Shown: positions 1-22,791, counted from the first letter of the whole stretch. The stretch: DNA of 63,585 nucleotides, filler included, from Octopus bimaculoides (GCF_001194135.2; 8 parts of 7 records of this genome joined end to end with filler, not necessarily neighbours in it); one strand, 5' to 3'. Numbers and translations: made by a program. Notes: generated from the letters alone by a model not told the origin.

Positions 1-211
1 TCCAACCCATGCCAGCATGGAAAGCGGACGTTAAACGATGATGATGATATCCACTGACGTCTTGTGGAAATGTCATAACAATGTTGAATTTTAGAACTCT
101 AGAAAATGGATACAATGAAGCAAGGTCCTTAGAGGGTTTTCCTGTACTTACTATATCTACAAAAACAGCAGCTTCTACCCTTCAGTCGATCTGACGATGT
201 TTATTGTGAAC

Positions 212-491
212 TGTGAGTGGATTTGGTAGACGGAAACTGAAAGAAGCCTGTCGTATATATGCATATATATGTGTGTGTGTGTTTTTGTGTGTCTGCGTTT
301 GTCTCCCCACCATTGCTTGACAACCGATGCTGGTGTGTTTACGTCCCCATAACGTAGCGGTTCGGCAAAAAGAGACCGATAGAATAAGTACTAGGCTTCC
401 AAATAAGTCCTGGGGTCGATTTGCTCGACTAAAGGCGGTGCTCCAGCATGGCCGCAGTCAAATGACTGAGACAAGTAAAAGAGTAAAAGAG
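212..491 (+). mobile_element. SINE family B, 5'-truncated
   Basis: gtgagtggatttggtagacggaaactgaaagaagcc...(TA/TG)n...gactgagacaagtaaaagag, shared with the other copies. Confidence 0.9.
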
Positions 492-913
492 AATATATGT
501 GTGTAACTGTTATTCAGATAGTTGATTGTCATTTTGGAAATTGTAGTAATGTGTGTTTTGGTGAGATGAAGCCACACAGGCAGTCAACCACCCGACTACT
601 GGAATTGTTTATCACAGTAACAATTTATTACCTGTAATGCGTTGCTGTGTTGCCTCAACTGTGACACCAATTCTTACTTCCTTTACTTCACCTTCATCAT
701 CCAAAGACGTTTCTTTATTAATTATGGAATCATTATTGATAAGTTTGGATGTGTTTGTATGGTGTTGACATTGTTATGTCTGAAGAAATTACTACGTTGT
801 TGATGTTCTCTTTTTTGATCTTTCATTACTTTTGTCATGTGTTTATCATCATCATCATCGTTTAACGTCTGCTTTCCATGCTAGCATGGGTTGGACGATT
901 TGACTGAGGACCT

Positions 914-951
<38 letters not shown>

Positions 952-1652
952 AATAAGAGTGAAAAAACTACAGAAGGGTTGTGTTACATGGTTAAAGTAT
1001 ATATTTAAATTATGTCAGAAAAATGTTATAAAATCTTTTTGGTATATAAACATTGTATTTGGAGAAATAACCGGTTTTGTGTTGTCTTTTCAAATTTCTC
1101 TACTTCATGGTAACATGTCTTCACTCCCACATCCAACCACGTGCTTTCACATACCAACTTTCTCACCTATATATATATATATATATATACATAATTATTA
1201 CAATTAAAAGGGTAAAGGATTATCAATTTATTAATTTATTAATAAATTAATAATTAATAATTTTTACCAAGCCCTTCGGTATGTAAGCACCATTATCGGT
1301 GGAGAACTTATTTAAAAGTTCTTATACATTTATAAACAAAATTAAGGGATCAGCAACAGGTTGCTTCACCACATACCGAAGTTCAGAAATAGTAGCTAAA
1401 ATGCTGAAACTTTTTCTTCTTTTCTTCTTTTTTTTCTTCTTTTTTTCTTCTTTTTTCTTCTTGTTTTGCCTATGTGAGTTGCAGGTAATTGCTATCTGTT
1501 GAAGTTTCAGCATTTTAGCTGCTATTTCTGTTTTATTATTGATATTTGTTCCATCATATTTCCTATATTTGATATGAAAATATTATTTTGTTTATCGATA
1601 AGATATGTTTGTATAACCTTGAACTCATCATTATATACTTCCTCATTTGTAG

Positions 1653-1828
1653 TACTCCTTTAAGCTCTCCCTGAAGAAGAAGGATAGGCTATCTAGCAGA
1701 GTGGTTGCTAGTTACCTGTCCGATTTAGGCGCTGACCTTCACCATCCAAATAGAGAGACTGTGACCCCACTGGGTCTCATCAATAACCCAGATCTGATAG
1801 AAAAATTAAAAGCCTTTTTACCACCTCA
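1653..1828 (+). CDS. Exon of an ankyrin-RING-death domain gene (copy A): last ankyrin repeat, MIB1/MIB2-like
   Basis: tttgtag acceptor and gtaagt donor; 176 nt, phase 0 in and 2 out. Encodes YSFKLSLKKKDRLSSRVVASYLSDLGADLHHPNRETVTPLGLINNPDLIEKLKAFLPP, resembling the mind bomb final ankyrin motif (A-x-Y/F-L-x3-GAD...N...PL). A homologous exon of the same length lies at 17575. Confidence 0.8.
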
Positions 1829-1895
1829 GTAAGTATTCCGTGGCAATAAAAAGATAGACAAGTATATTTTTTGTTTTGTATATAATCATTTCTAT

Positions 1896-1956
1896 GTGGA
1901 AGTGCAATGGCCCAGTGGTTAGTGCAGCGGACTCGCGGTCATAGGATCGCGGTTTC
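1896..1956 (+). mobile_element. SINE family A, head fragment
   Basis: Matches the 5' tRNA-like head of the full copies (caatggcccagtggttag...ggatcgcggtttc). Confidence 0.8.
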
Positions 1957-2316
1957 TTTTTGAAATGTTGTGGTAACAACAAACAAGATGAAGATACATA
2001 CCCATCCAATGTAAATAAGATGCAAAAATTCTACCCTCCTCCAGGTTATAACTGCATTCATTAACGTCTGGCGAAAACGAACTTACATCATCTTCGGACT
2101 TCTGTGAATATAAATCCAATGATTGTTGTTATGCTCTTGTTGTTGTTTTTGCAACTGTACTATGGACGCTAATAGGTCTTCCATTATTTAACAAGTTGTA
2201 TCACGAACAAAGTGTTAAATAACCTACGTGAGATTCGAAACCCTCATCGTCAGATGTTGTAACGTAATCTGTTATGTACAATAATTAAGATAATCAGATG
2301 TCAGTAAAAACAATGT

Positions 2317-2685
2317 TGTTGTTGGCACTCCATCGCTTACAACGACAAGGGTTCCAGTTGATCCGATCAACGGAACAGCCTGCTCGTGGAATTAACGTGC
2401 AAGTGGCTGAGCACTCCACAGACACGTTTACCCTTAACGTAGTTCTCGGGGATATTCAGCGTGGCACAGTGTGACAAGGCTGACCCTTTGAATTACAGGT
2501 ACAACAGAAAGAGGAAGTAAGAGTGAGAGAGTACAGCAGGGTTCGCCACCATCCCCTGCCAGAGCCTCGTGGAGCTTTAGGTGTTTTTGCCCAATAAACA
2601 CTCACAACGCCCGGTCTGGGAATCGAATCCACGGTCCTATGACCGCGAATCCGCTGCCCTAACCACTGGGCCATTGCGCCTCCAC
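2317..2685 (-). mobile_element. tRNA-derived SINE family A, full length
   Basis: Reverse complement of the family consensus; 11-bp TSD AAAAACAATGT at 2306-2316 and 2686-2696. Confidence 0.95.
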
Positions 2686-3238
2686 AAAAACAATGTAACA
2701 AACTAACAAATCTCTTCAAGAACTCACCGATCGATGCCGTCCGACTTTACTGTGATCCTTCATTGTGTTCTTCTGTAAGGATTTTGGCTTTTAATATCTC
2801 CTGTGCATGACTAGTTTTTAATTAGCTACAATGGTGGGGGAAGACACATCAGTCAGGCTTTCGAAGGATCAATTTGGTAGTGGGACCATTTCCCACAGCC
2901 CTTCAATCATAAAACTGTTAGGTACCTTTCATCGGTCTGAGATCATCCAGAGTGTTAGTGGTACATTGAAGGCAGATAGAAAAATGACATTTACTGCATT
3001 CAACTCATCAGTTTGAAATGAGCCCTTAGTATACATGAATCCCTAAAAATAATTCTCTCTACATTTTCTTGTTCTCTCTCAATTTTTTGCCTTCATCCAT
3101 TTCTGTCGAAGACCGTAGGCTCGAGTCGTCAAAGACTTTTTCCATTCTTCCCGAGGGTCAAACTAATAAAACAATACACCTGCTAGTGGTTCCCTCACCT
3201 GTCTTTGTCTTCTGTTTTCGGTAAATTTGAACTATATA

Positions 3239-3828
3239 GGCGCAGGAGTGGCTGTGTGGTAAGTAGCTTGCTTACCAACCACATGGTTCCGGGTGCAGTC
3301 CCACTGCGTGGCACCTTGGGCAAGTGTCTTCTACTATAGCCTCGGGCCGACCAAAGCCTTGTGAGTGGATTTGGTAGACGGAAACTGAAAGAAGCCCATC
3401 ATATATATATATATATATATATATANNNNNNNNNNNNNNNNNNNNNNNNNNNNNNNNNNNNNNNNNNNNNNNNNNNNNNNNNNNNNNNNNNNNNNNNNNN
3501 NNNNNNNNNNNNNNNNNNNNNNNNNNNNNNNNNNNNNNNNNNNNNNNNNNNNNNNNNNNNNNNNNNNNNNNNNNNNNNNNNNNNNNNNNNNNNNNNNNNN
3601 NNNNNNNNNNNNNNNNNNNNNNNNNNNNNNNNNNNNNNNNNNNNNNNNNNNNNNNNNNNNNNNNNNNNNNNNNNNNNNNNNNNNNNNNNNNNNNNNNNNN
3701 NNNNNNNNNNNNNNNNNNNNNNNNNNNNNNNNNNNNNNNNNNNNNNNNNNNNNNNNNNNNNNNNNNNNNNNNNNNNNNNNNNNNNNNNNNNNNNNNNNNN
3801 NNNNNNNNNNNTGAAACAAGTAAAAGAG
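3239..3828 (+). mobile_element. SINE family B with an internal gap
   Basis: tRNA-like head ggcgcaggagtggctgtgtggtaag... and the family 3' end after the N run. Confidence 0.9.
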
Positions 3829-3881
3829 TATATATGTGTGAATGTGTAGGAAATATTTGTTACTTTCGTTCATCCCTTTAG

Positions 3882-3940
3882 AATGCCATGGAAATTGTGT
3901 TCTGTCTGTCCATCCACAGAATTTAAAACCAAATGCCAGA
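3882..3940 (+). CDS. Candidate exon of gene A (MPWKLCSVCPSTEFKTKCQ), possibly the end of a first RING
   Basis: cccttta g acceptor with a weak gtataa donor. Phase 2 in and 1 out fits the chain with the neighbouring exons; contains CxxC. Confidence 0.4.
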
Positions 3941-4043
3941 GTATAAATAGATTAAATAGATTAGATACAATAAAATATTTGTTATCTACACATTTAATAA
4001 AGCCTAGATATACAAATGATCTTGTGTTCATATTTTTATTCAG

Positions 4044-4071
4044 AAGAAATGGAGTCTATGCTGGAATTAAA
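4044..4071 (+). CDS. Candidate micro-exon of gene A (KEMESMLELK)
   Basis: Strong tttttattcag acceptor and gtatat donor. Phase 1 in and 2 out; together with 3882-3940 it totals 87 nt, preserving frame into the RING exon. Confidence 0.35.
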
Positions 4072-4386
4072 GTATATTACGGCAATATATGTCGTTGACT
4101 GTGTTTTTTGCGATCTACATACACACAGAACAGTTTTAGTGATGTATCAGAGTGAAGACATACATTTATGTATATGTGTATAAGTTTGTATGTGTGTGTG
4201 TGTGTGTGTGTGTGTGCGCTGCTCATATAATCTGTTTGAATGTAATTGTTAAAAGGAAACCTTCTGATGTATTTGTGCTTGTCATTGAAGTGTCTCATAC
4301 TATTCTGAACTCTAATCACGTACACAATGTAATCTTTATTATAAATGAAAGTTATTGTTGGGATGTGTTTCTATTTTGTTCCGCAG

Positions 4387-4517
4387 ATGTACATATTGTG
4401 AAGCGAATGCCCCTTCAAAATTCGTACCATGTGGACATGCTCTCCTGTGTCATGAATGTTATGTCACTATTGCATGTGAAAAATGCCCCACTTGTCAACA
4501 AGATATACGGGGAAGTG
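4387..4517 (+). CDS. RING finger exon (C3HC4, MIB/IAP-like type)
   Basis: ttccgcag acceptor and gtaaga donor. Encodes CTYCEANAPSKFVPCGHALLCHECYVTIACEKCPTCQQDIRGS with full C-x2-C..PCGH..C-x2-C..CP-x-C spacing; phase 2 in and 1 out. Confidence 0.9.
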
Positions 4518-4788
4518 GTAAGAATACTATTTGATAATCTGTCTGTTTGTCTCATTGACTTTATTGTGTATAATGTATATGGTAATTAATGTACTTCAAT
4601 ATTATTGCCTAGATTCACATCTGCCATAATCTAGCTTATTTGTGATAAAAGAAGTTCATTGTAGTGACACTTTTTAATTACTTGGTCCTAATTAGCATTA
4701 GTGACAAATGCAGTATTGTAGCGGCAATGGAGTGGGATGTGGGTAGGGTTACATGTTCCTTGTAATGTTGTTCTTATAGTAACGATAA

Positions 4789-5178
4789 GTAGAGGTGCAA
4801 TGGCCCAGTGGTTAGGGCAGCAGACTCGCGGTCATAGGATCGTGGTTTCGATTCCCAGACCGGGCGTTGTGAGTGTTTATTGAGCGAAAACACCTAAAAG
4901 TCCACGAGGCTCCGGCAGGGGATGGTGGCGAACCCTGCTGTACTCTTCCACCACAACTTTCTCTCACTCTTACTTCCTGTTTCTGTTGTGCCTGTAATTC
5001 AAAGGGTCAGCCTTGTCACACTCTGTGTCACACTGAATATACCCCGAGAACTACGTTAAGGGTACACGTGTCTGTGGAGTGTTCAGCCACTTGCACGTTA
5101 ATTTCACGAGCAGGCTGTTCCGTTGATCGGATCAACTGGAACCCTCGTCGTCGCAAGCGACAGAGTGCGAACAACAAA
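4789..5178 (+). mobile_element. SINE family A, full length
   Basis: A/B-box-like head and (AAC)n tail; TSD ATAGTAAC(G/A)ATA. Confidence 0.95.
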
Positions 5179-5382
5179 ATAGTAACAATAGCATTAGAAA
5201 AACAGTTTCTCTCAGTGAAACCCTTCTGCAAATGTGTAATTCTGTGTCTTCAAATTTGCTGATAACTGGATTTTCACCCTATTAATCCTACCACATTGAT
5301 AAAAGGGGTATCAAGAGGGTGGGAAACTTTGATACATGTAGAGTTTTGTATTTTTGATACCAGTTCCTTTGTAACATTTCAG

Positions 5383-5421
5383 ATATTTCCAATGCGATAA
5401 TAAGTGTTTGGCAAGTTACAT
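5383..5421 (+). CDS. Possible symmetric micro-exon (DISNAIISVWQVT)
   Basis: atttcag|AT acceptor like the other linker cassettes; 39 nt, phase 1-1; the donor gtagtg is weak. Confidence 0.25.
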
Positions 5422-5857
5422 GTAGTGAATGAAGTTTGTTCAAGTGTAGATCCTTTTAGGACACCGGATATTACTTTCTGTTCCACTTGTAGAACGTCTG
5501 GAAAGAAAGCTGTTTTATTAATAAGCGCTGCTCGGGTTGAAATAGGCCCAAATATTTGCTGAATCAGATGGCATTCTGGTGAACTGTGAGGTCAGCAGTT
5601 AGAATTAAAGCTTACCAGCAGCAACGTTTACCAAGGAGAACAGGTGTTTGTTTATCCTATTTCAAATGAGGTGTCGTGTGTTTGTGGCTATATATTTAAG
5701 GACCAACTAAGTTGGCATTGAGTTGTGACATAGGAACCGGAAGCACAGTGATTACCAGTTGACCATTGGTGCTAATATGGCCCATAATAATGAAATAGAT
5801 TATTATTAAATAATGAAGTTATACTATAAATATAAAACTTGGAAATATTGATTTCAG

Positions 5858-5905
5858 AGCCTGAAATGTTGACAGGGAACGTACCGAAGACATCACAGCA
5901 AGTTG
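5858..5905 (+). CDS. Linker exon of gene A (EPEMLTGNVPKTSQQV)
   Basis: atttcag acceptor and gtgagt donor; 48 nt, phase 1-1, open frame; flanks are homologous to those of the 8378 and 9883 exons. Confidence 0.65.
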
Positions 5906-6795
5906 GTGAGTATCTACATCTTGTTATGTACAATTTCAGATAAATTCATCGGAGTAACATGTCGATGAGCAGTTGTATGTAGTTAATGATATTTGATACA
6001 AGTGTACAGTGTTTTAAGACTGTTATTTACCTGTTTGACCTGTGTAGAAATAATCATCACTCACCTGGAAAGAAATCTGCTTCGTCAAGGAAAATGAATG
6101 ACATTCGTATGTCTTTATTTCACTACCATTTACCTCTAAAATAATAACGATCTATATACTAACAATAATAAAGCAAACGAATCGTCATATTTCGAGAAAC
6201 GAAAATACACCAAGTAGAATGATCAGACCATTATGCAAAAGGTACAAAATTTAAACTTTACTGAATCAGATGATATCCTGCTTAACTGTGATGCGAGAAG
6301 TGAAAATTAAAGATTATCTGCAGCAATGTTTGAGAGAGTAGGGATGATGCGGAGGAGAGAGAGACCCAGGAAGACACTAGAAGAAGTATTGAAGGTCGAT
6401 CTCAAAATGCTGAACCTTACAAAAGAAATAAAAGATGTCCCCACCGTAACTGAATTGAGATCCTAAAATTAAGGTACCATGTAAAAAGGCATTGAAATAG
6501 ATGCGGGTTTTGTGTAAAAAGTAATGGCGCTAGTGACATGTAAAAAGCCTGCAGCATAAAGTGGTTGGAGTAAGGAAGGGTCCCCAGTCACAGAAGAGAC
6601 CCTAGAATCTTGTGTAGCCCCTGGTCTTGCCATTTCCTGGCCATACAACCCTTGACAAAATGGATTACGAAAGTCAAATGTTGGTGATAGTATGAATATT
6701 ACTGAAATTTCAAAACATAATCATCAAGGTTGGCATGATTGGTAATTTGGATAAATTGGCATTTTGGATATTTTCACTGCAATAATGTGTGAATA

Positions 6796-7462
6796 GTGGA
6801 GGCGCAATGGCCCAGTGGTTAGGGCAGTAGACTCGCGGTCATAGGATCGTGGTTTCGATTCCCAGACTGGGCGTTGTGAGTGTTTATTGAGCGAAAACAC
6901 CTAAAGCACCTCGAGGCTCCGGCAGGGGATGGTGGTGAACCCTGCTGTACTCTTCCACCACAACTTTCTCTCACTCTTTCTTCCTGTTTCTGTTGTGCCT
7001 GTATTTCAAAGGGTCAGCCTTGTCACACTCTGTGTCACACTGAATATCCCCGAGAACTACGTTAAGGGTACACGTGTCTGTGGAGTGCTCAGCCACTTGC
7101 ACGTTAATTTCACGAGCAGGCTGNNNNNNNNNNCGATTCCCAGACTGGGCGTTGTGAGTGTTTATTGAGCGAAAACACCTAAAGCACCTCGAGGCTCCGG
7201 CAGGGGATGGTGGTGAACCCTGCTGTACTCTTCCACCACAACTTTCTCTCACTCTTTCTTCCTGTTTCTGTTGTGCCTGTATTTCAAAGGGTCAGCCTTG
7301 TCACACTCTGTGTCACACTGAATATCCCCGAGAACTACGTTAAGGGTACACGTGTCTGTGGAGTGCTCAGCCACTTGCACGTTAATTTCACGAGCAGGCT
7401 GTTCTGTTGATCGGATCAACCGGAACCCTCGATGTCGTAAGCGACGGAGTGCCAACAACAAC
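6796..7462 (+). mobile_element. SINE family A, appearing doubled across a 10-N gap
   Basis: A single TSD AATGTGTGAAT (6784-6794 and 7463-7473) encloses two near-identical partial copies. Confidence 0.9.
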
Positions 7463-8377
7463 AATGTGTGAATGAGAGTGATATGCAGTTAATTAGATTT
7501 TGTGCAAGTGTAAAGTGTTCTAGGACACCTGTTACCATTCTCTGTTCCACTGGATGAATGCAAAGCTCCATCATTAAAGAGGATGAAAGACATTGAAATA
7601 TCTTTAAATATTTTCTGAATCTGATGACATTCTGGTGAACTGTGATGTGGGCAGTTGGAATTAAAAAGTAACAATGGTAACCTTTAAAAATGAGTGTAAG
7701 CATATGCTTATTGTTGCCGGATGGCATCTGTAAAGACATTCGAGCGAGATCGTTGCCAGTGCCGCCGAACTGGCTCCTGTGCAGGTGGCACGTAAAATAC
7801 ACCATTTTGAGCGTGGCCGTTGCCAGTACTGCCTGACTGGCCCTCGTGCCAATGGCACGTAAAAGCACCCACTGCACTCTCAGAGCATGGTGGAAGCTGA
7901 GAGAAATTGCTTTGAGTAACTTATTATCTCCTTGCCACCTCGAGTTGAAATGTTTTAACTTAATTAAATACTTTTATTTTTGAATATGTAATGTTTGTGC
8001 ATTCTTCTCCTTTTATGCAAACTGTCAAATTTATACCAAACATCTTACATAAGAATCGAAAGTCTAAACGAACAAAAAAACACGAAATAGAGTTATCAAG
8101 TGATAATTAAATGAGAAAATTGCACCATTGTTAGATTATGGAGGATGTCTTAATAGAGAGAGAGAGAGTAGGTTTAGGAAAGTTAGTCTATTTTTGTTGA
8201 GGACCTAAATTTGATGCTACTAATGGGACCACGAGGGAAAGCATAAAAATGTTGGTCAAACGAATTCTGCTCACCAGTTGACTATTGATGATAGGAAAGT
8301 CTCACAATAATAAAATATAGATTATTAACAAAGGACACTTTACAGTAATGTGCATAACTTGGACATATTTATTTCAG

Positions 8378-8611
8378 ATGCTCCAACGTTTGGGAAGTTC
8401 ACCAAGTTGTCGCAGCCTAAACCTTCTGCATCACAGCCTGAACCTTCTACATCACAGCATGAACCTTCTACATCACAGCATGAACCTTCTACATCACAGC
8501 ATGAACCTTCTACATCACAGCATGAACCTTCTACATCACAGCCTAAACCTTCTACATCACAGCATGAACCTTCTACATCACAGCCTAAACCTTCCACATC
8601 ACAGCCAGATA
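8378..8611 (+). CDS. Linker exon of gene A with a Ser/Pro/Thr-rich heptapeptide repeat
   Basis: atttcag acceptor and gtgagt donor; 234 nt, phase 1-1. Encodes DAPTFGKFTKLS + 9 x Q(H/P)(E/K)PS(T/A)S + QPD. Confidence 0.75.
8413..8610 (+). repeat. 21-bp coding minisatellite, 9 full units plus a partial
   Basis: Unit CAGCATGAACCTTCTACATCA with the variant CAGCCTAAACC..., read directly. Confidence 0.95.
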
Positions 8612-8865
8612 GTGAGTAAAATATTGCAACACTTTTATTGATTTCCACCTGTTTTATCTTTAGTTCAGATATTTTGTTTGTCAGAATGATTCTGACTGAG
8701 GACAGGTTTGATCCCTAATTTCCATTTGAACAGTTAGCTGTAAAGTAATATCATAAAATATCCACTGAGGTCAGCACTATTGGTATTATGGGTATATTAG
8801 GAAACGCAATGGAGTTAATATTGTCTTTTGCTTCAGGGAACTAAAATATATTATGGTTTTGATGT

Positions 8866-9253
8866 TGTTGTTGGCACTACGTTGCTTACGACGTCGAGTG
8901 TTCCAGTTGATCTGATCAGCGGAACAGCCTGCTCGTGAAATTAACATGCAAGTGGCTGAGCACTCCACAGACACGTGTACCCTTAATGTAGTTCTCGGGG
9001 GATATTCAGCGTGACACAGAGTGTGACAAGGCTGACCCTTTGAATTACAGGCGCAACAGAAACAGGAAGTAAGAGTGAGAGAAAGTTGTGGTGAAAGAGT
9101 ACAGCAGGGTTCGCCACCATCCCCTGCCGGAGCCTCGTGGAGCTTTAGGTGTTTTCACTCAATAAACACTCACAATGCCCAGTCTGGGAATCGAAACCGC
9201 GATCCTATGACCGCAAGTCCGCTGCCCTAACCACTGGGCCATTGCGACTCCAC
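8866..9253 (-). mobile_element. SINE family A, full length
   Basis: TSD GGTTTTGATGT at 8855-8865 and 9254-9264. Confidence 0.95.
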
Positions 9254-9882
9254 GGTTTTGATGTAAATAGGTGAATAAATGTTATTTTTTTGTTTGTTTT
9301 ACATTTTTGTTAATTCATTGATTACTGATAAATTATTGTTGTTATTGCTAAACCAGATGTCTTTTGCAATGTGACAGGCTTACGATATAAAGTGTTCCAA
9401 TTGTGAACACCCTGTCTTTTTTTTCACTGATAATAAATCTATCATTACATCCACTACATAGTGATGATGACATCATGTCTGCTTTTGATGACTTTTTGTG
9501 AGCAACAGGATGAAGACTTGTTTAGCAATGGGATTCAAGAACTGCAACACTGATGGAAGAAGTGTGTGGACCACAGGAAGGACTCTGTGGAAAAATAAAC
9601 TTCATTTGCTCACGTTCCATGAGGGCATCTTTGTCAGCCTATGAACTTTCATATTTAGGATGTCTTAATAAAAAAAGAGATTTAGGAAGGTTAGTCTATT
9701 CTGTGGTGGACCTGAATATTGAGCTTATTGTATGGTACCATTGTAAAACGTATAAGAAATGTTGAGGGGGAAACTGTTGTGGTCACCTTTTGACCATTGA
9801 GGATAGCAATATGCTATAATAATAAAATATAGATTATTGATAAAGATTAAGAAATTTTACTAGAAATTGCAACCCATTTCAG

Positions 9883-9954
9883 ATTCTCAAAAACTGGAGG
9901 AGAGGGATCTCCTGAAGGTGGCACGCCTGTTAGGATGCAATTGGTGGCAAGTGG
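9883..9954 (+). CDS. Death domain, N-terminal exon
   Basis: atttcag acceptor and gtgagt donor; 72 nt, phase 1-1. Encodes SQKLEERDLLKVARLLGCNWWQVG, matching the death-domain helix 1-2 pattern (L..VA..LG..W..VG). Confidence 0.85.
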
Positions 9955-10299
9955 GTGAGTAGAAAATAACAATACTGAATTTTAGCTTCACTTGAACTTT
10001 TGTATGTCAGAAGGACTGAGAACAGATTCCATTCCTAATTTCCATTTTGAAATTTTAACAGTAAAATCATTCTATTGAAGACACTGATGTAATTCAATAA
10101 AATTGAGATTAGCAGGATTGGTAAAATGGATAAATTAGTAAAACACAATAGAGTAAATATAAAAAAAAGAATGGTTGTGGGCAGAAAGAGAATCATTTCC
10201 CCAAACTCGATGCATATCCACAGCCGTGAATTTCTGATGAAGTCAACAATAGGGTTATTGTGTAGGAATCTGATAAGTAATTTCAGTTTAGATCATGAG

Positions 10300-10640
10300 C
10301 GTGGCCGTTGCCAGTACCGCCTGACTGGCCTCCGTAGGATTTTCGAGTGAGATTGTTGCCAGTGCCCCTGGACTGGCTCTTGTGCAGGTGGCACGTAAAA
10401 TACACCATTTTGAGTGTGGCCGTTGCCAGTACCTCCTGACTGGCCTTCATGCTGGTGGCACGTAAAAGCACCCACTACACTCTCTGAGTGGTTGGCGTTA
10501 GGAAGGGCATCCAGCTGTGGAAACTCTGCTAAATCAGATTGGAGCTTGGTGTTGCCATCTGGTTCGCCAGTCCTCAGTCAAATCGTCCAACCCATGCTAG
10601 CATGGAAAGCGGACGTTAAATGACGATGATGACGATGATG
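10300..10640 (+). mobile_element. RTE-type 3' tail element (other copies at 1-47, 855-912 minus, 7745-7885, 11895-12100 minus, 38881-38906)
   Basis: ggcacgtaaaagcaccc...ttggcgttaggaagggcatccagc...catgctagcatggaaagcggacgttaaa followed by a (GAT)n tail. The RTE assignment is inferred from the tail type. Confidence 0.75.
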
Positions 10641-11092
10641 AGGATGATCACCAAACTGGAATGACTTCTTACCACATGTCATATGTCTGAAGATGCTTCA
10701 ATATAAAGATGAAGCTTAATAGAGCATCCTCAGCTGAATCAGTTATTATCGCTGTTCTTTGAGCCAAATATCTGTGTTAATCCGACAGACTTAGGATAAA
10801 AGATGTTCCTAGAGTGACGTCTCTGTCTTTTACTTGGGAGCATAGGACTACATCATTAAACGGTCCTTTTTAACATGATAGGGTGTAGTTTCAGGGACCT
10901 GTGGCCTCCCCACTGTCCAGTGTCCCTCTAGCTGTGGATCATACTTCACTCACATCTAATGTTTAATTGTACGTAGATGAATGGTGTAGATGTTAGCAAG
11001 TTCTGTCTGCTTTTCTTTGACTTCTCTATAAATTGTGGCTTTGATCCAGTGAAAGATATCATCATTATGTGCCATGCATCCAGAGAGATTAA

Positions 11093-11622
11093 CCCTTTCG
11101 TTACTACACTTATTTTGAGATACTCTGTGCTTCTTTCAATTAATTTTAAATATAACAAAGAATTTAGTAAAATAATTTAGTTATCATTCAGCTGGTGTTA
11201 GGAACATAAATTGTGACTAAGGTTTGGTGGAAGATTTTAATTCAAAACTTATGAAAACAAGACATTTGTACTACAGAGCCAGGGGTGGTTTCAGCCGGAT
11301 TGGTATCAAAAGGTTTAATTTGCAGATTTTGTTTCGATTGTTAGAAATAGCAGCCAAATATTGTGCACATTGAAGGCACATTTGACTGAGTGTCTTTAAA
11401 CTTATTTGTTACCATATTTCTGTTGAGATGCTCTGTGTTTCCTTCAATTAATTTTAAATATAACAAATAATTTAGTAAAATAACTTAGTTATCATTCAGC
11501 TGGTGTTAGGAACATAAATTGTGACTAAGGTTTGGTGGAAGATTTTAATTCAAAACTTATGAAAACAAGGGATTTGTACTACAGAGCCAGAGGTGGTTTT
11601 AGCCGGGTTGGTAACGAAAGGG
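11093..11622. mobile_element. piggyBac-type MITE, dimeric
   Basis: TTAA at both ends (11089-11092 and 11623-11626), TIR CCCTTTCGTTAC/GTAACGAAAGGG, and two tandem internal units. Confidence 0.8.
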
Positions 11623-12523
11623 TTAAGCTGGTGTCTTGTGTAATTTGTGTTGTTTACCTAACTACGTTATATTAATTAGTCAGAGAAGGAAAGGTATCGC
11701 ACTCACAAATGACCTATTTCAGGCATTGATCATGTCAAGTCACTTCCTCTCTGCATTGAGAGTACACATTTCTGGTACTATGGACATGCGGTTAGAACTT
11801 TGCAGGAAAGGATATCAAGACAGATTATTCCAGCTTAACTAACTTGCAGGAGATCAATAATGAGATAATCCCAATTGGTTGCATTTGTGAATCGTCGTCG
11901 TCGTTTAATGTCCGCTTTCCATGCTAGCATGGGTTGGACGATTTGACTGAGGACTGGTGAAACCGGATGGCAACACCAGGCTCCAATCTGATTTGGCAGA
12001 GTTTCTACAGCTGGATGCCCTTCCTAACGCCAACCACTCAGAGAGTGTCGTGGGTGCTTTTACGTGTCACCCGCACGAAGGCCAGTCAGGCGGTACTGGC
12101 TACGATGGTTTCTTCCGACACAACCTCATGCGGGAGATGCATGAGAAAACTCTATCCTTAGAACCTTTCCAGGAATACTAAGCAGAGAAAATGCATGGAA
12201 AGATGGACGGATGGATTGATGAAGTGACTTGGCTGTTGATTCTTTAGGTTTTAATACACTTAAGCACTTCTGACATTTGCTTTCCAGAAATTTTCGCAAA
12301 TCCAATTTTCAATTAATTTTGTTCAAAATTCAACCTCTTCGTTATTTGTGCCATCATTCTTAGAAATAGAAGACAATGCCTTATATTTTTCATATTTCTT
12401 CAGTTTTTTGTAGTTTTCTGTTAATATAGTTTCTTTGTTATATTTATAACAACCTACAACACGTAACTCTGATATTATTGTTAATGTTGTTGCAGTTATT
12501 TCTTATTGTTCTATCTTCAACAG

Positions 12524-12741
12524 GTATTTTCTTGGGAATTGAAAGTACCCAACTGGGACATATCCGGTATGACTTTTCTGGTAATGTTCAAGAGCAGAGC
12601 TTCCAGATGCTGCTCTTCTGGTCAACACATTGTGATCCGCAGGAAGTTACAGTGGATACATTGAGGATAGCTCTTGAAGAAGCTGAGTGCCTTACTGCAC
12701 TCAAATGTCTATCGTTACATGTAAAGGGAATTATTGTATAA
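12524..12741 (+). CDS. Death domain, C-terminal (probably terminal) exon
   Basis: ttcaacag acceptor in phase 1. Encodes GIFLGIESTQLGHIRYDFSGNVQEQSFQMLLFWSTHCDPQEVTVDTLRIALEEAECLTALKCLSLHVKGIIV*, with death-domain motifs LGI, MLLxW and TV..L..AL. An AATAAA lies at 13155-13160. Confidence 0.85.
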
Positions 12742-12873
12742 ATGTTGTTTGACCCCAGGTCAACCTTGACCAAGCAATGATCTATGATCAGATGTCTCCC
12801 AGCTGGGACCATCCTGCCTTTATTCTTAATGTAGAAAACCCAAAGCCACATTGTCCCACTTGTCCAACTTTAA

Positions 12874-13093
12874 CCCTTTAGTGCTTAAACCGGTCATATC
12901 TGGCCAAAATATTCTACCTGTTTTATGTTCAAACTAGTCAGATATGGTCATTCATAGCTACCTTATTGTGTCATTTTAAAATTAAACAATCGCATAATTG
13001 AAATCTCAAAGCCATGAAATGATGCAGGATTAATTTTACATGGTGTGAATACATAAGCTTTACATTTGGCAGAATAATCTGAGTGCTAAAGGG
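12874..13093. mobile_element. piggyBac-type MITE
   Basis: TTAA-CCCTTTAG at the left end and CTAAAGGG-TTTA at the right end. Confidence 0.6.
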
Positions 13094-13527
13094 TTTAGGG
13101 TGAGGTGTGAATTTTGGTAAATTTGGTTACTAATTCTAGCAGATCTGTCAACCAAATAAAGACCACTTCACTGGTTTGGCTCTTTTATTAGTAATTAACT
13201 TTTAAAATAAAGATAAACTTTGAAATGTTCAACTGTTGTTGGTGTTGTTGTTTGTCTAATTACCCCCTTAAACACGTCCATTGTTATGTTGACAGTTATA
13301 ATATCCAAAGGGATCAAGTCGATTACATCAACCCCAGTGCGTAACTGGTACATTATTTATCGACCCCGAAAGGATGAACGGCAAAGTCGACCTCGGCGGA
13401 ATTTGAACTCAGAACGTAAAGACAGACGAAATACCGCTAAGCATTTCGCCCGGCACCAAACNNNNNNNNNNCGGCACCTAACGTTTCTGCCATCTCGTTG
13501 CCTTAACCACAAAATATTGACGACGAC

Positions 13528-13560
<33 letters not shown>

Positions 13561-13710
13561 GATGATGATGACGATGATGATGACGTTGATGATGACGATG
13601 ATGATGACGACGATGACGATGACGATGATGATGACGATGATGATGATGATGATGTTGTAACTGAGGAGAGTGAAAGACTGGTAAGAATATCAAGAATTCA
13701 GAAATAAGTT

Positions 13711-14301
13711 ATTGGCACTTCCGTCGCTTACGACGACGAGGGGNNNNNNNNNNNNNNNNNNNNNNNNNNNNNNNNNNNNNNNNNNNNNNNNNNNNNNNNN
13801 NNNNNNNNNNNNNNNNNNNNNNNNNNNNNNNNNNNNNNNNNNNNNNNNNNNNNNNNNNNNNNNNNNNNNNNNNNNNNNNNNNNNNNNNNNNNNNNNNNNN
13901 NNNNNNNNNNNNNNNNNNNNNNNNNNNNNNNNNNNNNNNNNNNNNNNNNNNNNNNNNNNNNNNNNNNNNNNNNNNNNNNNNNNNNNNNNNNNNNNNNNNN
14001 NNNNNNNNNNNNNNNNNNNNNNNNNNNNNNNGTGTACCCTTAACGTAGTTCTTGGGGATATTCAACGTGACACAGTGTGACAGGGCTGACCCTTTGAATT
14101 ACAGGTACAACAGAAAGTAAGGGTGAGAGAAAGTTGTGGTGGAAGAGTACAGCAGGGTTCACCACCATCCCCTACCGGAGCCTCGTGGAACTTTAGGTGT
14201 TTTCGCTCAATAAACACTCACAACGCCCTGTCTGGGAATCGAAACCGCAATTCTATGACCGCGAGTCCGCTGCCCTAACCACTGGGCCATTGCGCCTCCA
14301 C
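13711..14301 (-). mobile_element. SINE family A with an internal gap
   Basis: Both termini match the family consensus. Confidence 0.9.
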
Positions 14302-14463
14302 CAAAAGTAAACATTAGCCGTACAATTTTTCTTTACTAGTTTTGATCTGTTAATCATGTTCACCCTTGTTTAACACCCCTAAAACTTACTATAGTGAGGG
14401 ATAAATGAAGATTAGGCTAAAACAGACATCTTAATATATTTATCATGTCTCTAACACACACAA

Positions 14464-14762
14464 GTGGAGGTTCAATGGCCCAGTGGTTAGGGCAGCGGAC
14501 TCGCGGTCATAGGATCGTGGTTTCGATTTCCAGACCAGGCGTTGTGAGTGTTTATTGAGCGAAAACACCTAAAGCTCCACGAGGCTCCGGCAGGGGATGG
14601 TGGCGAACCCTGCTGTACTCTTCCACCACAACTTTCTCTTACTCTTACTTCCTGTTTCTGTTGTGCCTGTAATTCAAAGGGTCAGCCTTGTCACACTGTG
14701 TCACGCTAAATATCCCCGAGAACTACGTTAAGGGTACACGTGTCTGTGGAGTGTTCAGTCAC
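14464..14762 (+). mobile_element. SINE family A, cut by a gap
   Basis: Head and body match the consensus. Confidence 0.9.
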
Positions 14763-15813
14763 NNNNNNNNNNNNNNNNNNNNNNNNNNNNNNNNNNNNNN
14801 NNNNNNNNNNNNNNNNNNNNNNNNNNNNNNNNNNNNNNNNNNNNNNNNNNNNNNNNNNNNNNNNNNNNNNNNNNNNNNNNNNNNNNNNNNNNNNNNNNNN
14901 NNNNNNNNNNNNNNNNNNNNNNNNNNNNNNNNNNNNNNNNNNNNNNNNNNNNNNNNNNNNNNNNNNNNNNNNNNNNNNNNNNNNNNNNNNNNNNNNNNNN
15001 NNNNNNNNNNNNNNNNNNNNNNNNNNNNNNNNNNNNNNNNNNNNNNNNNNNNNNNNNNNNNNNNNNNNNNNNNNNNNNNNNNNNNNNNNNNNNNNNNNNN
15101 NNNNNNNNNNNNNNNNNNNNNNNNNNNNNNNNNNNNNNNNNNNNNNNNNNNNNNNNNNNNNNNNNNNNNNNNNNNNNNNNNNNNNNNNNNNNNNNNNNNN
15201 NNNNNNNNNNNNNNNNNNNNNNNNNNNNNNNNNNNNNNNNNNNNNNNNNNNNNNNNNNNNNNNNNNNNNNNNNNNNNNNNNNNNNNNNNNNNNNNNNNNN
15301 NNNNNNNNNNNNNNNNNNNNNNNNNNNNNNNNNNNNNNNNNNNNNNNNNNNNNNNNNNNNNNNNNNNNNNNNNNNNNNNNNNNNNNNNNNNNNNNNNNNN
15401 NNNNNNNNNNNNNNNNNNNNNNNNNNNNNNNNNNNNNNNNNNNNNNNNNNNNNNNNNNNNNNNNNNNNNNNNNNNNNNNNNNNNNNNNNNNNNNNNNNNN
15501 NNNNNNNNNNNNNAAATTTTCAAAGATATTGGGGGTGGGTGGAAGTCTTTCCCAAACTCGAGTTATATTATGTAAGCAACGATATTTCATCTCCTTTCAT
15601 CTTCAAAGGTATGGCCTCTTTACCATAAAGAAGGTTACCCATCTTGTATGTTGGCCATACAAACATCCATCAGGGCATGAAAAGAGATTACCTCTTGCAG
15701 AGAGGAGATAATATTCTCAAATAACAATGATACAGTATAGAGGATAGTCTTTATAATGTAGGTGCCATGAAAAATACATCCAGTGGAATTTATGAAGAAT
15801 TATGACTGAAACA

Positions 15814-16178
15814 TGGAGGCGCAATAGCCTAGTGGTTAGGGCAGCGGACTCGTGGTCATAGGATCGCGGTTTTGATTCCCAGACCGGGCGTTGTGAGTTT
15901 AGCTCCACGAGGCTCCGGCAGGGGATGGTGGCGAACCTTGCTCTACTCTTCCACCACAACTTTCTCTCACTCTTTCTTCCTGTTTCTGTTGTGCCTGTAA
16001 TTCAAAGGGTCAGCCTTGTCACACTGTGTCACGCTGAATATCCCCGAGAACTACGTTAAGGGTACACGTGTCTGTGGAGTGCTCAGCCACTTGCACGTTA
16101 ATTTCACGAGCAGGCTGTTCCGTTGATCGGATCAACTGGAACCCTCGACGTCGTAAGCGACGGAGTGCCAACAACAAA
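15814..16178 (+). mobile_element. SINE family A with a small internal deletion
   Basis: TSD ATGACTGAAACA at 15802-15813 and 16179-16190. Confidence 0.95.
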
Positions 16179-16199
16179 ATGACTGAAACACCCCTCTAC

Positions 16200-16740
16200 C
16201 CCACTTCTTCTGGATGTTTATGGGTTCTGTTAGAACACTAAAACATGAGTATGATAAAGAAAGGTCCTTAGCGTGTTTCCATTACTTAAATTTTCTATAT
16301 ACAATCACATTTACATTTCTAGTGATGTCTTGGATCTGTAGTCTTCAAATCAGCTTTCTCCTTTCTGACCTTCAGAAGCCTAATTTCTCAAAATCGGTAT
16401 TTACGCAGTGTTCTACATATCCCAATGCCCCAATAATTACAGGTATACACCTGAACTTGTAATCTGGAAAGACTAGCTGCAGATTTCTCAATAGTTCCAC
16501 GTAGGTATTCTCTGCATCTATGTTAGCATCTGCTCGGCAGCTGATTTCCACATTGTTCAGTTTCTCTTCACTATACCAAACCATTGTGTTTATATTTCAT
16601 TAGGGTTTCCACTGACACATTCTACCGTACTGGTATGAGTGACTATGGCTTCTACCATAATGTAGGGTTAGGGTTAGGGTTTTGTCCTCAGGGTTATCCC
16701 TTCGATAGCTACAACATCATGTCTCACCAGTAGGTAATCT
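16200..16740 (-). mobile_element. Decayed non-LTR retrotransposon, restriction-like endonuclease region (CRE/NeSL/R2-type)
   Basis: Fragments RHDVVA, VEISCRADANI..Y..LLRNLQ and IPVIIGALG on the minus strand, with stops and frameshifts. Confidence 0.75.
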
Positions 16741-17064
16741 GCTATAGGCACAGTATGCAGCTGGATGAAAAATCGACCTCGATGGAATTTGAACTCAGAA
16801 TGTAAAGATGAAATACTGCAGAGACACATGATTTGCCCAGTTTCTTCAGAGACGTCGGGACCGTTTTTATCCTCTCCAGATAAATAACATGGTATTCTAA
16901 CAAAGCATTCAGGTTGAGGTGGATGTATTCAGAATTCAAGTGAGTCTCTTTTTTTTTTCCTTATGATTAAAAGTCTCTCCAGATATGTGTGTTGTAATGT
17001 CTAATTTAATAAGCGATTTTGGGTGCCACCTCACCTACTTATTCGAAGAAATTATGCAATCTGT

Positions 17065-17225
17065 TAGTTCTGATACATTTGTCCTCATCCTAACACAACG
17101 TTTCGGCTGAAGAAATTTCGAGGTATTTTTCGATATTATTATTCAGGTCACTGCCTGGAATTGAACTCAGAATCTTGGGGATAGTAACCCGTACTCTTAA
17201 CCACTACACCATATGCCCATGGGCA
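17065..17225 (-). mobile_element. SINE family H, uninterrupted and internally deleted copy
   Basis: tttgtcctcatc..acacaacgtttcggctg..ttttcgatattattattcaggtcactgcctgg..ttaaccactacaccatatgccc. Confidence 0.75.
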
Positions 17226-17574
17226 ATTATGGAGTGGATTTTAGGGCTTATAAATCTAATATTCTCCTATCCTTCCTTAATACTGGTTCCCATATGCTAT
17301 TCATATCTGCACTCGGTCTGCTTAGGAGGTTGTTGTGTCCTAGCATATGTGCTGCTTCTTTTAGTTTTCGTATTTTCCAGTGGGGTTCTCTGTCTATTGT
17401 TCTAACTTCATCCCACAGGGATATAGAATCGTTTTGGTTTGTTGACATTTGTGATTTTATTATTCCGATATTTGTTCCATTATATTCTTTGTATTTGACA
17501 TGATGTCTTCATTCTGTTTTTTTTTTATATTTGTGTAATATTTTACCCATTGTTTTATATTTCATCTTTTGTAG

Positions 17575-17750: not shown

Positions 17751-17768
17751 GTAAGTATTAAGAATTCC

Positions 17769-18549: not shown

Positions 18550-18588
<39 letters not shown>

Positions 18589-22735: not shown

Positions 22736-22791
<56 letters not shown>

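What the first reader, a model, noticed from the sequence alone, without database searches (positions are those of the whole stretch)
1653..12741. Hidden spliced gene: ankyrin-RING-linker-death domain, a mind-bomb-like C-terminus with an added death domain
Seen: phase-consistent exons with canonical splice sites give last ankyrin repeat (1653), RING (4387), S/P/T-rich linker (5858, 8378) and a death domain split over 9883 and 12524; the ORF track misses most of this. Established: MIB1/MIB2 E3 ligases end in RING domains, and death domains mediate homotypic adaptor contacts in TNFR/Toll/IMD-type signalling. Inference: this is a lineage-specific E3 ligase that couples ubiquitination to death-domain signalling (innate immunity or cell death). 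It is the best candidate for an undescribed system in this window.
Basis: partly seen in the sequence, partly recalled or inferred. Interest (0 to 1): 0.72.

Follow-up and report, generated by a model that had tools for sequence, protein, structure and literature searches.

The report
Octopus ankyrin-RING-death-domain ligase gene
The window holds the 3' two-thirds of a real spliced Octopus bimaculoides gene from an octopus-only family of mind-bomb-derived ubiquitin ligases with a death domain added at the C-terminus; databases already hold automatic models of the family, but I found no paper on it.

Summary
Six exons join in frame into 292 codons plus a stop: 1653-1828, 4387-4517, 5858-5905, 8378-8611, 9883-9954 and 12524-12741. 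All have AG/GT splice sites. They encode a mind-bomb-type last ankyrin repeat, one intact C3HC4_3 RING, a disordered S/P/T/Q-rich linker and a death domain.

The window is the first 18.6 kb of O. bimaculoides scaffold LGKD02103728.1, so the upstream ankyrin exons lie off the scaffold. RefSeq annotates only the last four exons (LOC106878668, 187 aa). Neither assembly gap affects the coding sequence.

The gene belongs to a family of dozens of models found only in three Octopus species. They are auto-named MIB2-like, MIB1-like or ankyrin-3-like. Full-length members are ANK x5-8, RING, a variable linker and a death domain, and they lack the MIB/HERC2-ZZ region of true mind bomb.

The linker exons are diverged tandem duplicates of the exon for death-domain helix 1. 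The same linker-plus-death-domain exon module also ends an octopus adhesion GPCR.

The proposed function is a RING ligase recruited into death-domain assemblies. This is inferred from the architecture only. I rate it a new variant of known kinds, of moderate interest.

The parts
1653..1828 (+). Exon A (176 nt, phase 0 to 2): C-terminal capping ankyrin repeat of the mind-bomb type, YSFKLSLKKKDRLSSRVVASYLSDLGADLHHPNRETVTPLGLINNPDLIEKLKAFLPPQ
   Evidence: Acceptor ttgtag|, donor |gtaagt. 15 Octopus paralogs align here. The family profile's best PDB hit is MIB1 ANK residues 343-382, E=3.2e-12. Pfam Ank itself was not detected on this short piece.
4387..4517 (+). Exon B (131 nt, phase 2 to 1): complete C3HC4_3 RING, C-x2-C-x10-C-x-H-x3-C-x2-C-x8-C-x2-C
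   Evidence: PF13920 scores 30.1-33.0 bits against a cut-off of 27. cIAP1/cIAP2/XIAP RINGs match in the PDB. All eight zinc ligands are present and fall in conserved columns of A1: seven invariant, the last Cys (C95) nearly invariant.
5858..5905 (+). Exon C (48 nt, phase 1 to 1): linker cassette EPEMLTGNVPKTSQQV. The RefSeq model starts at the ATG at 5866.
   Evidence: Its upstream flank and 3' end (CAAGTTG|GTGAGT) are homologous to those of exon E.
8378..8611 (+). Exon D (234 nt, phase 1 to 1): linker cassette holding an in-frame 21-nt minisatellite (8413-8605, 9.2 copies, 94% matches) that encodes (Q-H/P-E/K-P-S-T-S)n
   Evidence: The whole linker is 21% S, 18% P, 13% T and 13% Q. AF2 gives pLDDT about 50 for it.
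9883..9954 (+). Exon E (72 nt, phase 1 to 1): start of the death domain (helix 1 region), NSQKLEERDLLKVARLLGCNWWQVG
   Evidence: It is part of the pLDDT>90 helical bundle.
12524..12741 (+). Exon F (218 nt, phase 1 to stop): rest of the death domain, with stop TAA at 12739-12741
   Evidence: A search of 1.84 billion proteins with this exon gave 43 hits at E<=0.001. In Foldseek, the ankyrin-G, FADD, RAIDD, PIDD and RIPK1 death domains match at TM 0.75-0.84.
5742..5857 (+). Intron flank upstream of exon C, homologous to the flanks of exons D and E (trace of exon duplication)
   Evidence: A3 alignment, 73% mean column identity. nhmmer finds exactly three units in the locus.
8261..8377 (+). Intron flank upstream of exon D, same duplicated unit
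   Evidence: (family D16)
9773..9882 (+). Intron flank upstream of exon E, same duplicated unit. It is also conserved in a paralog (L002) and in an adhesion GPCR gene (L003).
3426..3811 (.). Assembly gap in the intron between exons A and B, abutting an (AT)n tract. It hides no exon.
6856..7401 (.). Assembly artefact in the intron between exons C and D: one SINE copy written twice around the 10-N gap (268 nt, 100% identical)
12981..13211 (+). Candidate polyadenylation signals (ATTAAA at 12981, AATAAA at 13155 and 13206) 240-470 nt after the stop
   Evidence: pattern match only

Best explanation
Positions 1653-12741 (+) are the last six exons of an Octopus bimaculoides gene whose 5' ankyrin-repeat exons lie beyond the start of the scaffold. 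The gene belongs to an Octopus-restricted, tandemly duplicated family derived from the ankyrin-plus-RING half of a mind-bomb-like E3 ligase. That half lost the MIB/HERC2-ZZ substrate-binding region and gained a C-terminal death domain on a flexible linker.

Shown: the exon structure; a RING with all eight zinc ligands; a confidently folded death domain of the DD subfamily proper; a disordered linker; the family membership; and the origin of the linker exons as diverged tandem copies of the exon for death-domain helix 1.

Inferred mechanism: the death domain inserts by homotypic contacts into oligomeric death-domain assemblies (Myddosome-, PIDDosome- or DISC-like, or homo-oligomers of the family). 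The RING, possibly helped by the ankyrin block as a substrate clamp, then ubiquitinates components of that assembly and tunes innate-immune or cell-death signalling. The phase 1-1 linker cassettes allow length isoforms that set the reach between anchor and ligase.
For: - Gene model. RefSeq independently joins exons C to F.
- Domains. AF2 gives pLDDT>90 for the death domain, with the top 25 Foldseek matches (all at probability 1.00) being death domains proper.
- MIB ancestry: the exon-A profile hits the last ANK repeat of MIB1 at E=3e-12.
- Family: 43 clusters at 50% identity and 35 at 90% identity. Every one of the 54 looked up was from an Octopus species.
- Family architecture: Ank x5-8, zf-C3HC4_3 and Death, without MIB_HERC2 or ZZ.
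- Modular layout: in paralog P0077, AF2 gives ANK 84-95, RING 70-77, linker about 30 and death domain 83-92 pLDDT, with pTM 0.51. The modules look like beads on a string.
- Linker: 5-115 aa across members. Isoforms of one locus differ by 17-18 aa steps, and all linker exons are phase 1-1.
- Precedent: vertebrate MIB2 is recruited through its MZM region to oligomeric RIPK1. It ubiquitinates lysines in the RIPK1 death domain and blocks DD-DD assembly (PMC5912950). It also ubiquitinates cFLIP (PMC7815719). The family profile's best solved death-domain match is RIPK1 (E=2e-11).
Against: - No transcript, expression, interaction or activity data were available, so function rests on domain content.
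- The N-terminus of this particular gene is not in the assembly.
- The residue after the last RING cysteine (the 'linchpin' of many RING E3s, from general knowledge) is Gln here, whereas it is Arg in the largest group of aligned paralogs (6 of 13) and in the cIAP1 RING aligned. This copy could therefore be a weak ligase.
- Some paralog models lack a RING cysteine or death-domain helix 1.
- Pairwise dN/dS of 0.3-0.6 on short exons shows only moderate constraint.
- Pfam Death is only just above threshold for this copy, and only when scanned alone.
Confidence: 0.6

Rival explanations
1. The death domain is an intramolecular regulator of the ligase rather than a recruitment module. It would work like the CARD of cIAP1, which holds the RING in an inactive monomeric state until a signal releases it.
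For: A death-fold domain next to the same RING type exists in cIAP1/2 and in oyster BIR-DD-RING IAPs (PMC8917759; that paper cites the cIAP1 CARD autoinhibition study). The RING of this family is most similar to IAP RINGs.
Against: Here the death domain follows the RING on a long disordered linker (94 aa in this gene). AF2 gives no confident inter-domain packing (pTM 0.51-0.53). The domain is a DD proper, not a CARD.
Confidence: 0.15
2. This copy is a decaying or non-functional partial duplicate at a scaffold edge, or a ligase-dead adaptor or decoy that only caps death-domain assemblies.
For: No 5' exons are present in the assembly. RefSeq models only 187 aa. The 90% cluster holding that model has one member, so no second independent protein model was found. 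The linchpin position is Gln. dN/dS is 0.3-0.6. Exon D holds a young minisatellite expansion.
Against: Six exons remain open with canonical splice sites. All eight zinc ligands are present and the death domain is predicted at pLDDT>90. The missing 5' end is explained by the scaffold starting inside the gene.
Confidence: 0.15
3. It is an ordinary MIB1/MIB2 orthologue acting in Notch-ligand endocytosis, as its RefSeq-style name suggests.
For: The ANK region is homologous to MIB1 and the RING type is shared. Database names say 'MIB2-like'.
Against: Full-length paralogs start directly with ankyrin repeats and lack MIB/HERC2, ZZ and REP. They have one RING and end in a death domain. There are many paralogs per genome, in tandem.
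Confidence: 0.03

Closest known systems
Mind bomb E3 ligases MIB1 and MIB2
   Same: The terminal ankyrin repeat is specifically homologous to that of MIB1 (8v0e, E=3e-12). It is followed by a C3HC4_3 RING. Vertebrate MIB2 already acts on death-domain and DED complexes through RIPK1 and cFLIP (PMC5912950, PMC7815719).
   Different: Family members have no MIB/HERC2-ZZ-MIB/HERC2 or REP region. They have one RING instead of two or three. The protein does not end at the RING but continues into a linker and a death domain. It is a multi-copy, Octopus-only family.
cIAP1/cIAP2 (BIR-UBA-CARD-RING) and oyster BIRC11-type IAPs (BIR-DD-RING; PMC8917759)
   Same: The same RING subtype sits in one chain with a death-fold domain. 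These are lineage-specific expansions in molluscs linked to apoptosis and immunity.
   Different: Paralogs have no BIR domain. The domain order is reversed (RING then DD). The death-fold domain is a DD proper rather than a CARD-like domain. Ankyrin repeats replace BIRs as the likely binding module.
Ankyrin-repeat plus death-domain proteins (ankyrins, ANKDD1, DAPK1, NF-kB p100/p105; listed from general knowledge)
   Same: An ANK block lies upstream of a C-terminal death domain. The ankyrin-G death domain is the best structural match (TM 0.84), which explains the RefSeq name 'ankyrin-3-like'.
   Different: None of these carries a RING between the ANK block and the death domain. There are no ZU5-UPA, kinase or Rel-homology regions here.
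Death domains of RIPK1 and PIDD1
   Same: These are the closest solved death domains by sequence: PIDD at E=2e-6 for this gene and RIPK1 at E=2e-11 for the family profile.
   Different: Identity is only 26-28% in the Foldseek structural alignments. The host proteins are unrelated (a kinase and an LRR-ZU5-UPA protein). Partner specificity cannot be read from this.
Octopus adhesion GPCR with a C-terminal death domain (LOC106882527; one such receptor was noted in PMC6408891)
   Same: It ends in the same three-exon module: an S/T/Q-repeat linker exon, the death-domain helix-1 exon and death-domain exon 2. The intron flanks are about 71% identical over 456 nt.
   Different: The host protein is LRR-GPS-7TM, with no ANK or RING.

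Membership tests
Mind bomb (MIB1/MIB2) | N-terminal MIB/HERC2-ZZ-MIB/HERC2 (MZM) and REP substrate-binding region | tested here: not met
   Pfam on full-length paralogs (P0008, P0013, P0028, P0016) finds only Ank, zf-C3HC4_3 and Death. For this locus itself the 5' end lies off the scaffold, so this was tested on the family, not on this copy.
Mind bomb (MIB1/MIB2) | Ankyrin block homologous to the MIB ankyrin block | tested here: met
   The exon-A family profile has its best PDB hit on MIB1 ANK residues 343-382, E=3.2e-12.
Mind bomb (MIB1/MIB2) | Two or three C-terminal C3HC4_3 RINGs, with the protein ending after the last RING | tested here: not met
   There is one RING (exon B), followed by a 94-aa linker and a death domain.
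Death domain, DD subfamily (PF00531) | Profile match above Pfam's gathering score | tested here: met
   24.5 bits against 22.6 for the isolated 96 aa. It was not reported when the 292-aa product with its low-complexity linker was scanned. Paralogs score 42-45 bits.
Death domain, DD subfamily (PF00531) | Compact helical bundle of the death fold, closest to DDs rather than CARD, DED or PYD | tested here: met
   AF2 gives pLDDT>90 over residues 98-182 of P0001. The top 25 Foldseek PDB hits are all death domains at TM 0.64-0.84. CARDs appear only at E>1.
Death domain, DD subfamily (PF00531) | Homotypic oligomerisation with other death domains | not testable with these tools
   This needs pull-down, SEC-MALS or filament assays.
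RING-HC, zf-C3HC4_3 (IAP/MIB type) E3 ligase | Eight zinc ligands in C3HC4 order and a profile match above the gathering score | tested here: met
   The pattern is C-x2-C-x10-C-x-H-x3-C-x2-C-x8-C-x2-C. The score is 30.1-33.0 bits against 27. The ligand columns are conserved in the family alignment: seven invariant, the last Cys nearly invariant.
RING-HC, zf-C3HC4_3 (IAP/MIB type) E3 ligase | E2 binding and ubiquitin-transfer activity | not testable with these tools
   Only an indirect hint is available: the residue after the last Cys is Gln here and Arg in 6 of the 13 aligned family sequences.
IAP/BIRC family (including oyster BIR-DD-RING) | At least one BIR domain | tested here: not met
   No BIR was found in any of eight family members scanned or in the 292 aa encoded here.
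Octopus ANK-RING-DD family (RefSeq 'MIB2-like', 'MIB1-like', 'ankyrin-3-like') | Collinear homology over last ANK, RING and death domain, with the same exon boundaries | tested here: met
   39-51% identity to 12 members over 198 aligned residues. tblastn hits stop at the exon edges. The well-assembled paralog L002 has the same exon series.
Octopus ANK-RING-DD family (RefSeq 'MIB2-like', 'MIB1-like', 'ankyrin-3-like') | N-terminal block of several ankyrin repeats | not testable with these tools
   The scaffold starts 1652 bases upstream of exon A, and no ANK exon lies in positions 1-1652.

The most novel reading that the evidence does not exclude
Octopuses have built a private death-domain signalling network from one mobile three-exon module (repeat linker, DD helix-1 exon, DD exon 2). 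The module was copied onto dozens of mind-bomb-derived RING ligases and onto the cytoplasmic tail of at least one LRR adhesion GPCR. A surface receptor could therefore recruit its own family of E3 ligases directly by DD-DD contacts. Linker length would be diversified by exon duplication, minisatellite growth and cassette splicing.
Probability: 0.2. Interest if true: 0.65.

Novelty: new variant of a known kind. Interest (0 to 1): 0.4.

Why it matters
If it is real and active, this is a lineage-specific way of wiring ubiquitination to death-domain signalling. Vertebrate MIB2 reaches the death-domain protein RIPK1 through its MZM region. The octopus family lacks that region and carries a death domain itself.

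It would add cephalopods to the marine invertebrates with lineage-specific expansions of death-fold immune or apoptosis proteins. One comparative study found very few of a related adaptor class, the TRADD-N domain, in cephalopods (PMC8195603).

It is also a clear case of linker growth by duplication of a domain-encoding exon. The same module appears in an unrelated receptor gene, which looks like DNA-level exon shuffling.

In practical terms, RefSeq LOC106878668 is a truncated model, and the family's 'MIB2-like' names are misleading.

Tried and rejected
- Homologue searches: three calls to the search for homologous proteins failed on time-outs. A word-index search with exons A and B found nothing, which reflects that tool's sensitivity limit, since local tblastn finds paralogs easily.
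- Hidden exon in gap 3426-3811: rejected. Paralogs are continuous across the A-to-B junction, and the well-assembled paralog has no exon there.
- One gene with shared 5' ankyrin exons and alternative 3' cassettes: this idea arose because no ANK exon lies between the stop at 12741 and the second copy's exon at 17575. I do not claim it. In paralog L002 the preceding two-ankyrin exon is a single exon of about 225 nt, 1.2 kb upstream. Such an exon would fit inside the 751-N gap at 14763-15513.
- Dscam-like selector or docking elements: considered because the roughly 115 nt upstream of exons C, D and E are conserved. Rejected, because the homology runs for hundreds of bases on both sides of the exons. 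It is a duplicated segment, not a discrete element.
- More copies of the cassette unit in the introns: none found. nhmmer finds exactly three.
- Other content: no Rfam family and no tRNA in the window, including the SINE copies. Seven other long ORFs have no Pfam match.
- Literature: no paper was found on an ANK-RING-DD family in octopus, and none containing 'MIB2-like'.
- Contig look-up of P0008: not on record.

Full report
SOURCE. An exact protein look-up places the window at bases 1-18588 of Octopus bimaculoides scaffold LGKD02103728.1 (GCA_001194135.2, 88,423 bp). Window and record coordinates are identical (L001 matches the window base for base). The DNA is AT-rich eukaryotic sequence. 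It holds ten matches (nine elements, one of them written twice at a gap) to a SINE-like element of about 395 nt (88-96% identity to the copy at 4760-5200) in both orientations. None of them touches an exon.

OBSERVATION.
- A: 1653-1828
- B: 4387-4517
- C: 5858-5905
- D: 8378-8611
- E: 9883-9954
- F: 12524-12741

Each starts after a pyrimidine-rich tract and AG, and each internal exon is followed by GT(A/G)AG. The phases chain without a break (0>2, 2>1, 1>1, 1>1, 1>1, 1>stop). They give an 879-nt reading frame of 292 codons ending in TAA at 12739-12741.

Pfam calls zf-C3HC4_3 above its cut-off (30.1 and 33.0 bits against 27). It calls Death above its cut-off (24.5 against 22.6) when the C-terminal 96 residues are scanned alone. 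The Death match was not listed when the whole product, with its low-complexity linker, was scanned. Against solved structures, the best death-domain match is PIDD (E=2e-6) and the best RING match is cIAP1 (E=4e-5).

Chance is excluded by independent proteins. A search of 1.84 billion representative proteins with exon F alone found 43 relatives. tblastn of those proteins back onto the window lights up exactly exons A, B, E and F, with the hits ending at the exon edges.

THE GAPS. Gap 3426-3811 sits in the intron between exons A and B, next to an (AT)n tract. Paralogs are continuous across that junction (P0040 residues 231>233, P0023 102>104). In a well-assembled paralogous locus (L002), the equivalent intron is about 1.7 kb with no exon in it.

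Gap 7124-7133 sits in the intron between exons C and D. The 268 bases on either side are identical, and they are overlapping parts of one SINE copy (element positions 29-358 and 90-418). The scaffold therefore carries an unmerged overlap, and the true intron is about 278 bases shorter. Neither gap bears on the reading frame.

WHAT IS ALREADY ANNOTATED. RefSeq XP_014783439.1 is named 'uncharacterized protein LOC106878668', and its UniProt entry A0A0L8G7P4 is 'Death domain-containing protein'. It is exactly the last 187 residues of the joined product, starting at the ATG at 5866 inside exon C. The junctions C-D, D-E and E-F were therefore reached independently by NCBI's pipeline. Exons A and B add 105 residues to that model. 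The model is short because the scaffold begins inside the gene. No ankyrin exon lies in positions 1-1652.

THE FAMILY. The relatives are proteins of O. bimaculoides, O. sinensis and O. vulgaris. Their automatic names include 'E3 ubiquitin-protein ligase MIB2-like', 'MIB1-like', 'ankyrin-3-like' and '26S proteasome non-ATPase regulatory subunit 10-like', and many loci have up to 22 isoforms.

Full-length members (450-563 aa) consist of five to eight ankyrin repeats, one zf-C3HC4_3 RING, a linker and a C-terminal Death domain. They have no MIB/HERC2, ZZ or BIR domain. A profile built from last ANK, RING and death domain found 35 clusters (at 90% identity), all from Octopus. All 20 clusters (at 50% identity) that I looked up from the exhaustive search were Octopus or an unnamed sequencing-run assembly.

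The window's product aligns to twelve members at 39-51% identity. All eight zinc ligands fall in conserved columns, seven invariant and the last Cys nearly invariant.

A profile of the exon-A region has its best solved-structure match on the last ankyrin repeat of human MIB1 (8v0e residues 343-382, E=3.2e-12), ahead of generic ankyrin proteins. The 'mind-bomb-like' ancestry of the ANK-RING half is therefore supported. Membership of MIB1/MIB2 proper is not.

STRUCTURE. AlphaFold2 on the RefSeq fragment gives a disordered linker (pLDDT about 50) and a helical bundle at pLDDT>90. The top 25 Foldseek matches in the PDB are all death domains proper, including ankyrin-G (TM 0.84), FADD, RAIDD, PIDD, RIPK1, TRADD and TNFR1. 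CARDs appear only at E>1.

A 298-residue paralog (P0077) is predicted as an ankyrin stack, a RING, a 30-residue disordered stretch and a death domain, with pTM 0.51. This looks like separate modules on a flexible tether. The family profile's best solved death-domain match is RIPK1 (E=2e-11), and its best RING match is cIAP1/2.

THE LINKER AND ITS ORIGIN. Exons C, D and E are all phase 1-1 and multiples of three. The roughly 115 nt upstream of each are homologous (73% mean column identity). Exon C ends like exon E (CAAGTTG|GTGAGT against CAAGTGG|GTGAGT). A profile of this unit finds exactly three copies in the locus. It also finds the corresponding linker exon and helix-1 exon in paralog L002.

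The linker cassettes are therefore diverged tandem duplicates of the exon that encodes death-domain helix 1. Exon D has in addition grown by a young, in-frame 21-nt minisatellite (9.2 copies, 94% matches) encoding Q-(H/P)-(E/K)-P-S-T-S.

Across the family the RING-to-DD spacing runs from 5 to 115 residues. Isoforms of single loci differ by 17-18 residues, as expected for cassette exons. The homology between units extends for hundreds of bases on both sides of the exons. It is a duplicated segment, not a discrete regulatory element.

MODULE SHARING WITH A RECEPTOR. One hit, LOC106882527, is an LRR-GPS-7TM adhesion GPCR. Its locus (L003) ends in the same series: an S/T/Q-repeat linker exon, a helix-1 exon and DD exon 2. 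The unit profile matches upstream of its helix-1 exon at E=1e-19. The window and the GPCR gene are 70.8% identical over 456 nt spanning that exon and both intron flanks. This points to DNA-level exon shuffling between two gene families. [quoted passage not shown]

SECOND COPY. A paralogous exon A lies at 17575-17751 (+), with AG/GT sites and an open frame. Its RING exon lies near record position 22631. The family is therefore tandemly arranged here. No ankyrin exon is assembled between 12741 and 17575, but a 751-N gap lies where one would be expected.

HOW IT PROBABLY WORKS. This part is inferred, not shown. Death domains act by homotypic assembly, and C3HC4_3 RINGs of the IAP/MIB type recruit E2 enzymes.

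The closest functional precedent is vertebrate MIB2. It binds oligomeric RIPK1 through its MZM region, ubiquitinates lysines in the RIPK1 death domain and thereby blocks DD-DD assembly (PMC5912950). It also ubiquitinates cFLIP (PMC7815719).

The octopus family lacks MZM and carries a death domain instead. The simplest reading is a ligase that docks directly into death-domain assemblies and modifies their components. The ankyrin block could hold substrates, and the variable tether could set the reach.

Several points argue for caution:
- The residue after the last RING cysteine is Gln in this copy and Arg in 6 of the 13 aligned family sequences.
- dN/dS between paralogs is 0.3-0.6 on short exons.
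- No expression or interaction data could be examined.

The rivals are an autoinhibitory role for the death domain (as for the cIAP1 CARD), a ligase-dead decoy or decaying duplicate, and a true MIB orthologue. The architecture contradicts the last of these.

NOVELTY. All three domains and the general logic are known. RING plus death-fold combinations exist in cIAP1/2 and in oyster BIR-DD-RING IAPs (PMC8917759). ANK plus DD combinations exist in ankyrins and NF-kB precursors (general knowledge).

The order ANK-RING-linker-DD, derived from mind bomb and confined to Octopus in my searches, was not found described in any paper I could search. It is, however, present in public automatic annotation. 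I rate it a new variant of a known kind, with moderate interest.

Noticed in passing
window 17575-17751 (+); L001 about 22631-22741: A second, tandem family member lies downstream. It has an intact paralogous last-ankyrin exon (39% identical to exon A in alignment A4) with AG/GT sites, and its RING exon lies about 5 kb further on. No ankyrin exon is assembled between the first gene's stop and this exon, but a 751-N gap (14763-15513) lies where one is expected.
   Followed up: partly
L003 90336-95922 (O. bimaculoides CM046602.1, LOC106882527): An LRR-GPS-7TM adhesion GPCR ends in the same three-exon linker-plus-death-domain module as the window gene. The intron flanks are about 71% identical over 456 nt, which points to exon shuffling between the two families.
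   Followed up: yes
window 6856-7401: The 10-N gap at 7124-7133 is flanked by 268 identical bases that are overlapping parts of one SINE copy. This is an unmerged contig overlap that adds an artificial 278 bp to the intron.
   Followed up: yes
window 1893-1956, 2310-2685, 4760-5200, 6795-7123, 7134-7461, 8862-9253, 14032-14301, 14462-14762, 15816-16180, 17769-18151: A SINE-like element of about 395 nt gives ten matches (nine elements; the pair at 6795-7123 and 7134-7461 is one copy written twice) at 88-96% identity in both orientations, all in introns or intergenic DNA. Three assembly gaps abut copies. There is no tRNA or Rfam match.
   Followed up: partly
window 12783-12857 (+, frame 3): Just after the stop codon, a stretch is 56% identical to the alternative C-terminus of an O. 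sinensis isoform (P0064, ...DQMPSSQDPPDFILSIGNPTSHCPM). That isoform replaces the end of the death domain, so an alternative 3' splice choice may be conserved in the family.
   Followed up: no
window 8413-8605: An in-frame 21-nt minisatellite (9.2 copies, 94% matches) lies inside coding exon D. The closest database relative (the O. vulgaris model, 84% identical in exon F) shows no such repeat, so the repeat is probably young and may vary in length.
   Followed up: partly
window 9652-10159 versus L003; window 8093-8370 versus L003: The intron flanks of the death-domain helix-1 exon are about 70% identical between paralogs on different chromosomes. Synonymous sites of neighbouring exons differ at 42-76% of sites, so the flanks look more conserved than silent sites. 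The estimate rests on short segments and remains unexplained.
   Followed up: partly
window 7739-7885 and 10342-10488; 10421-10564 versus 11961-12104 (inverted); 1-47, 10586-10632; 848-911 and 11891-11954: At least one further interspersed repeat family is present in direct and inverted copies within the introns, and a 222-nt tandem duplication lies at 11097-11626. There are no Pfam matches in their ORFs.
   Followed up: no
window 13528-13654: A (GAT)n-type trinucleotide microsatellite (42 copies, 85% matches) lies in the intergenic region. It produces the long poly-Asp, poly-Met and poly-His ORFs in the ORF list, which are not genes.
   Followed up: no
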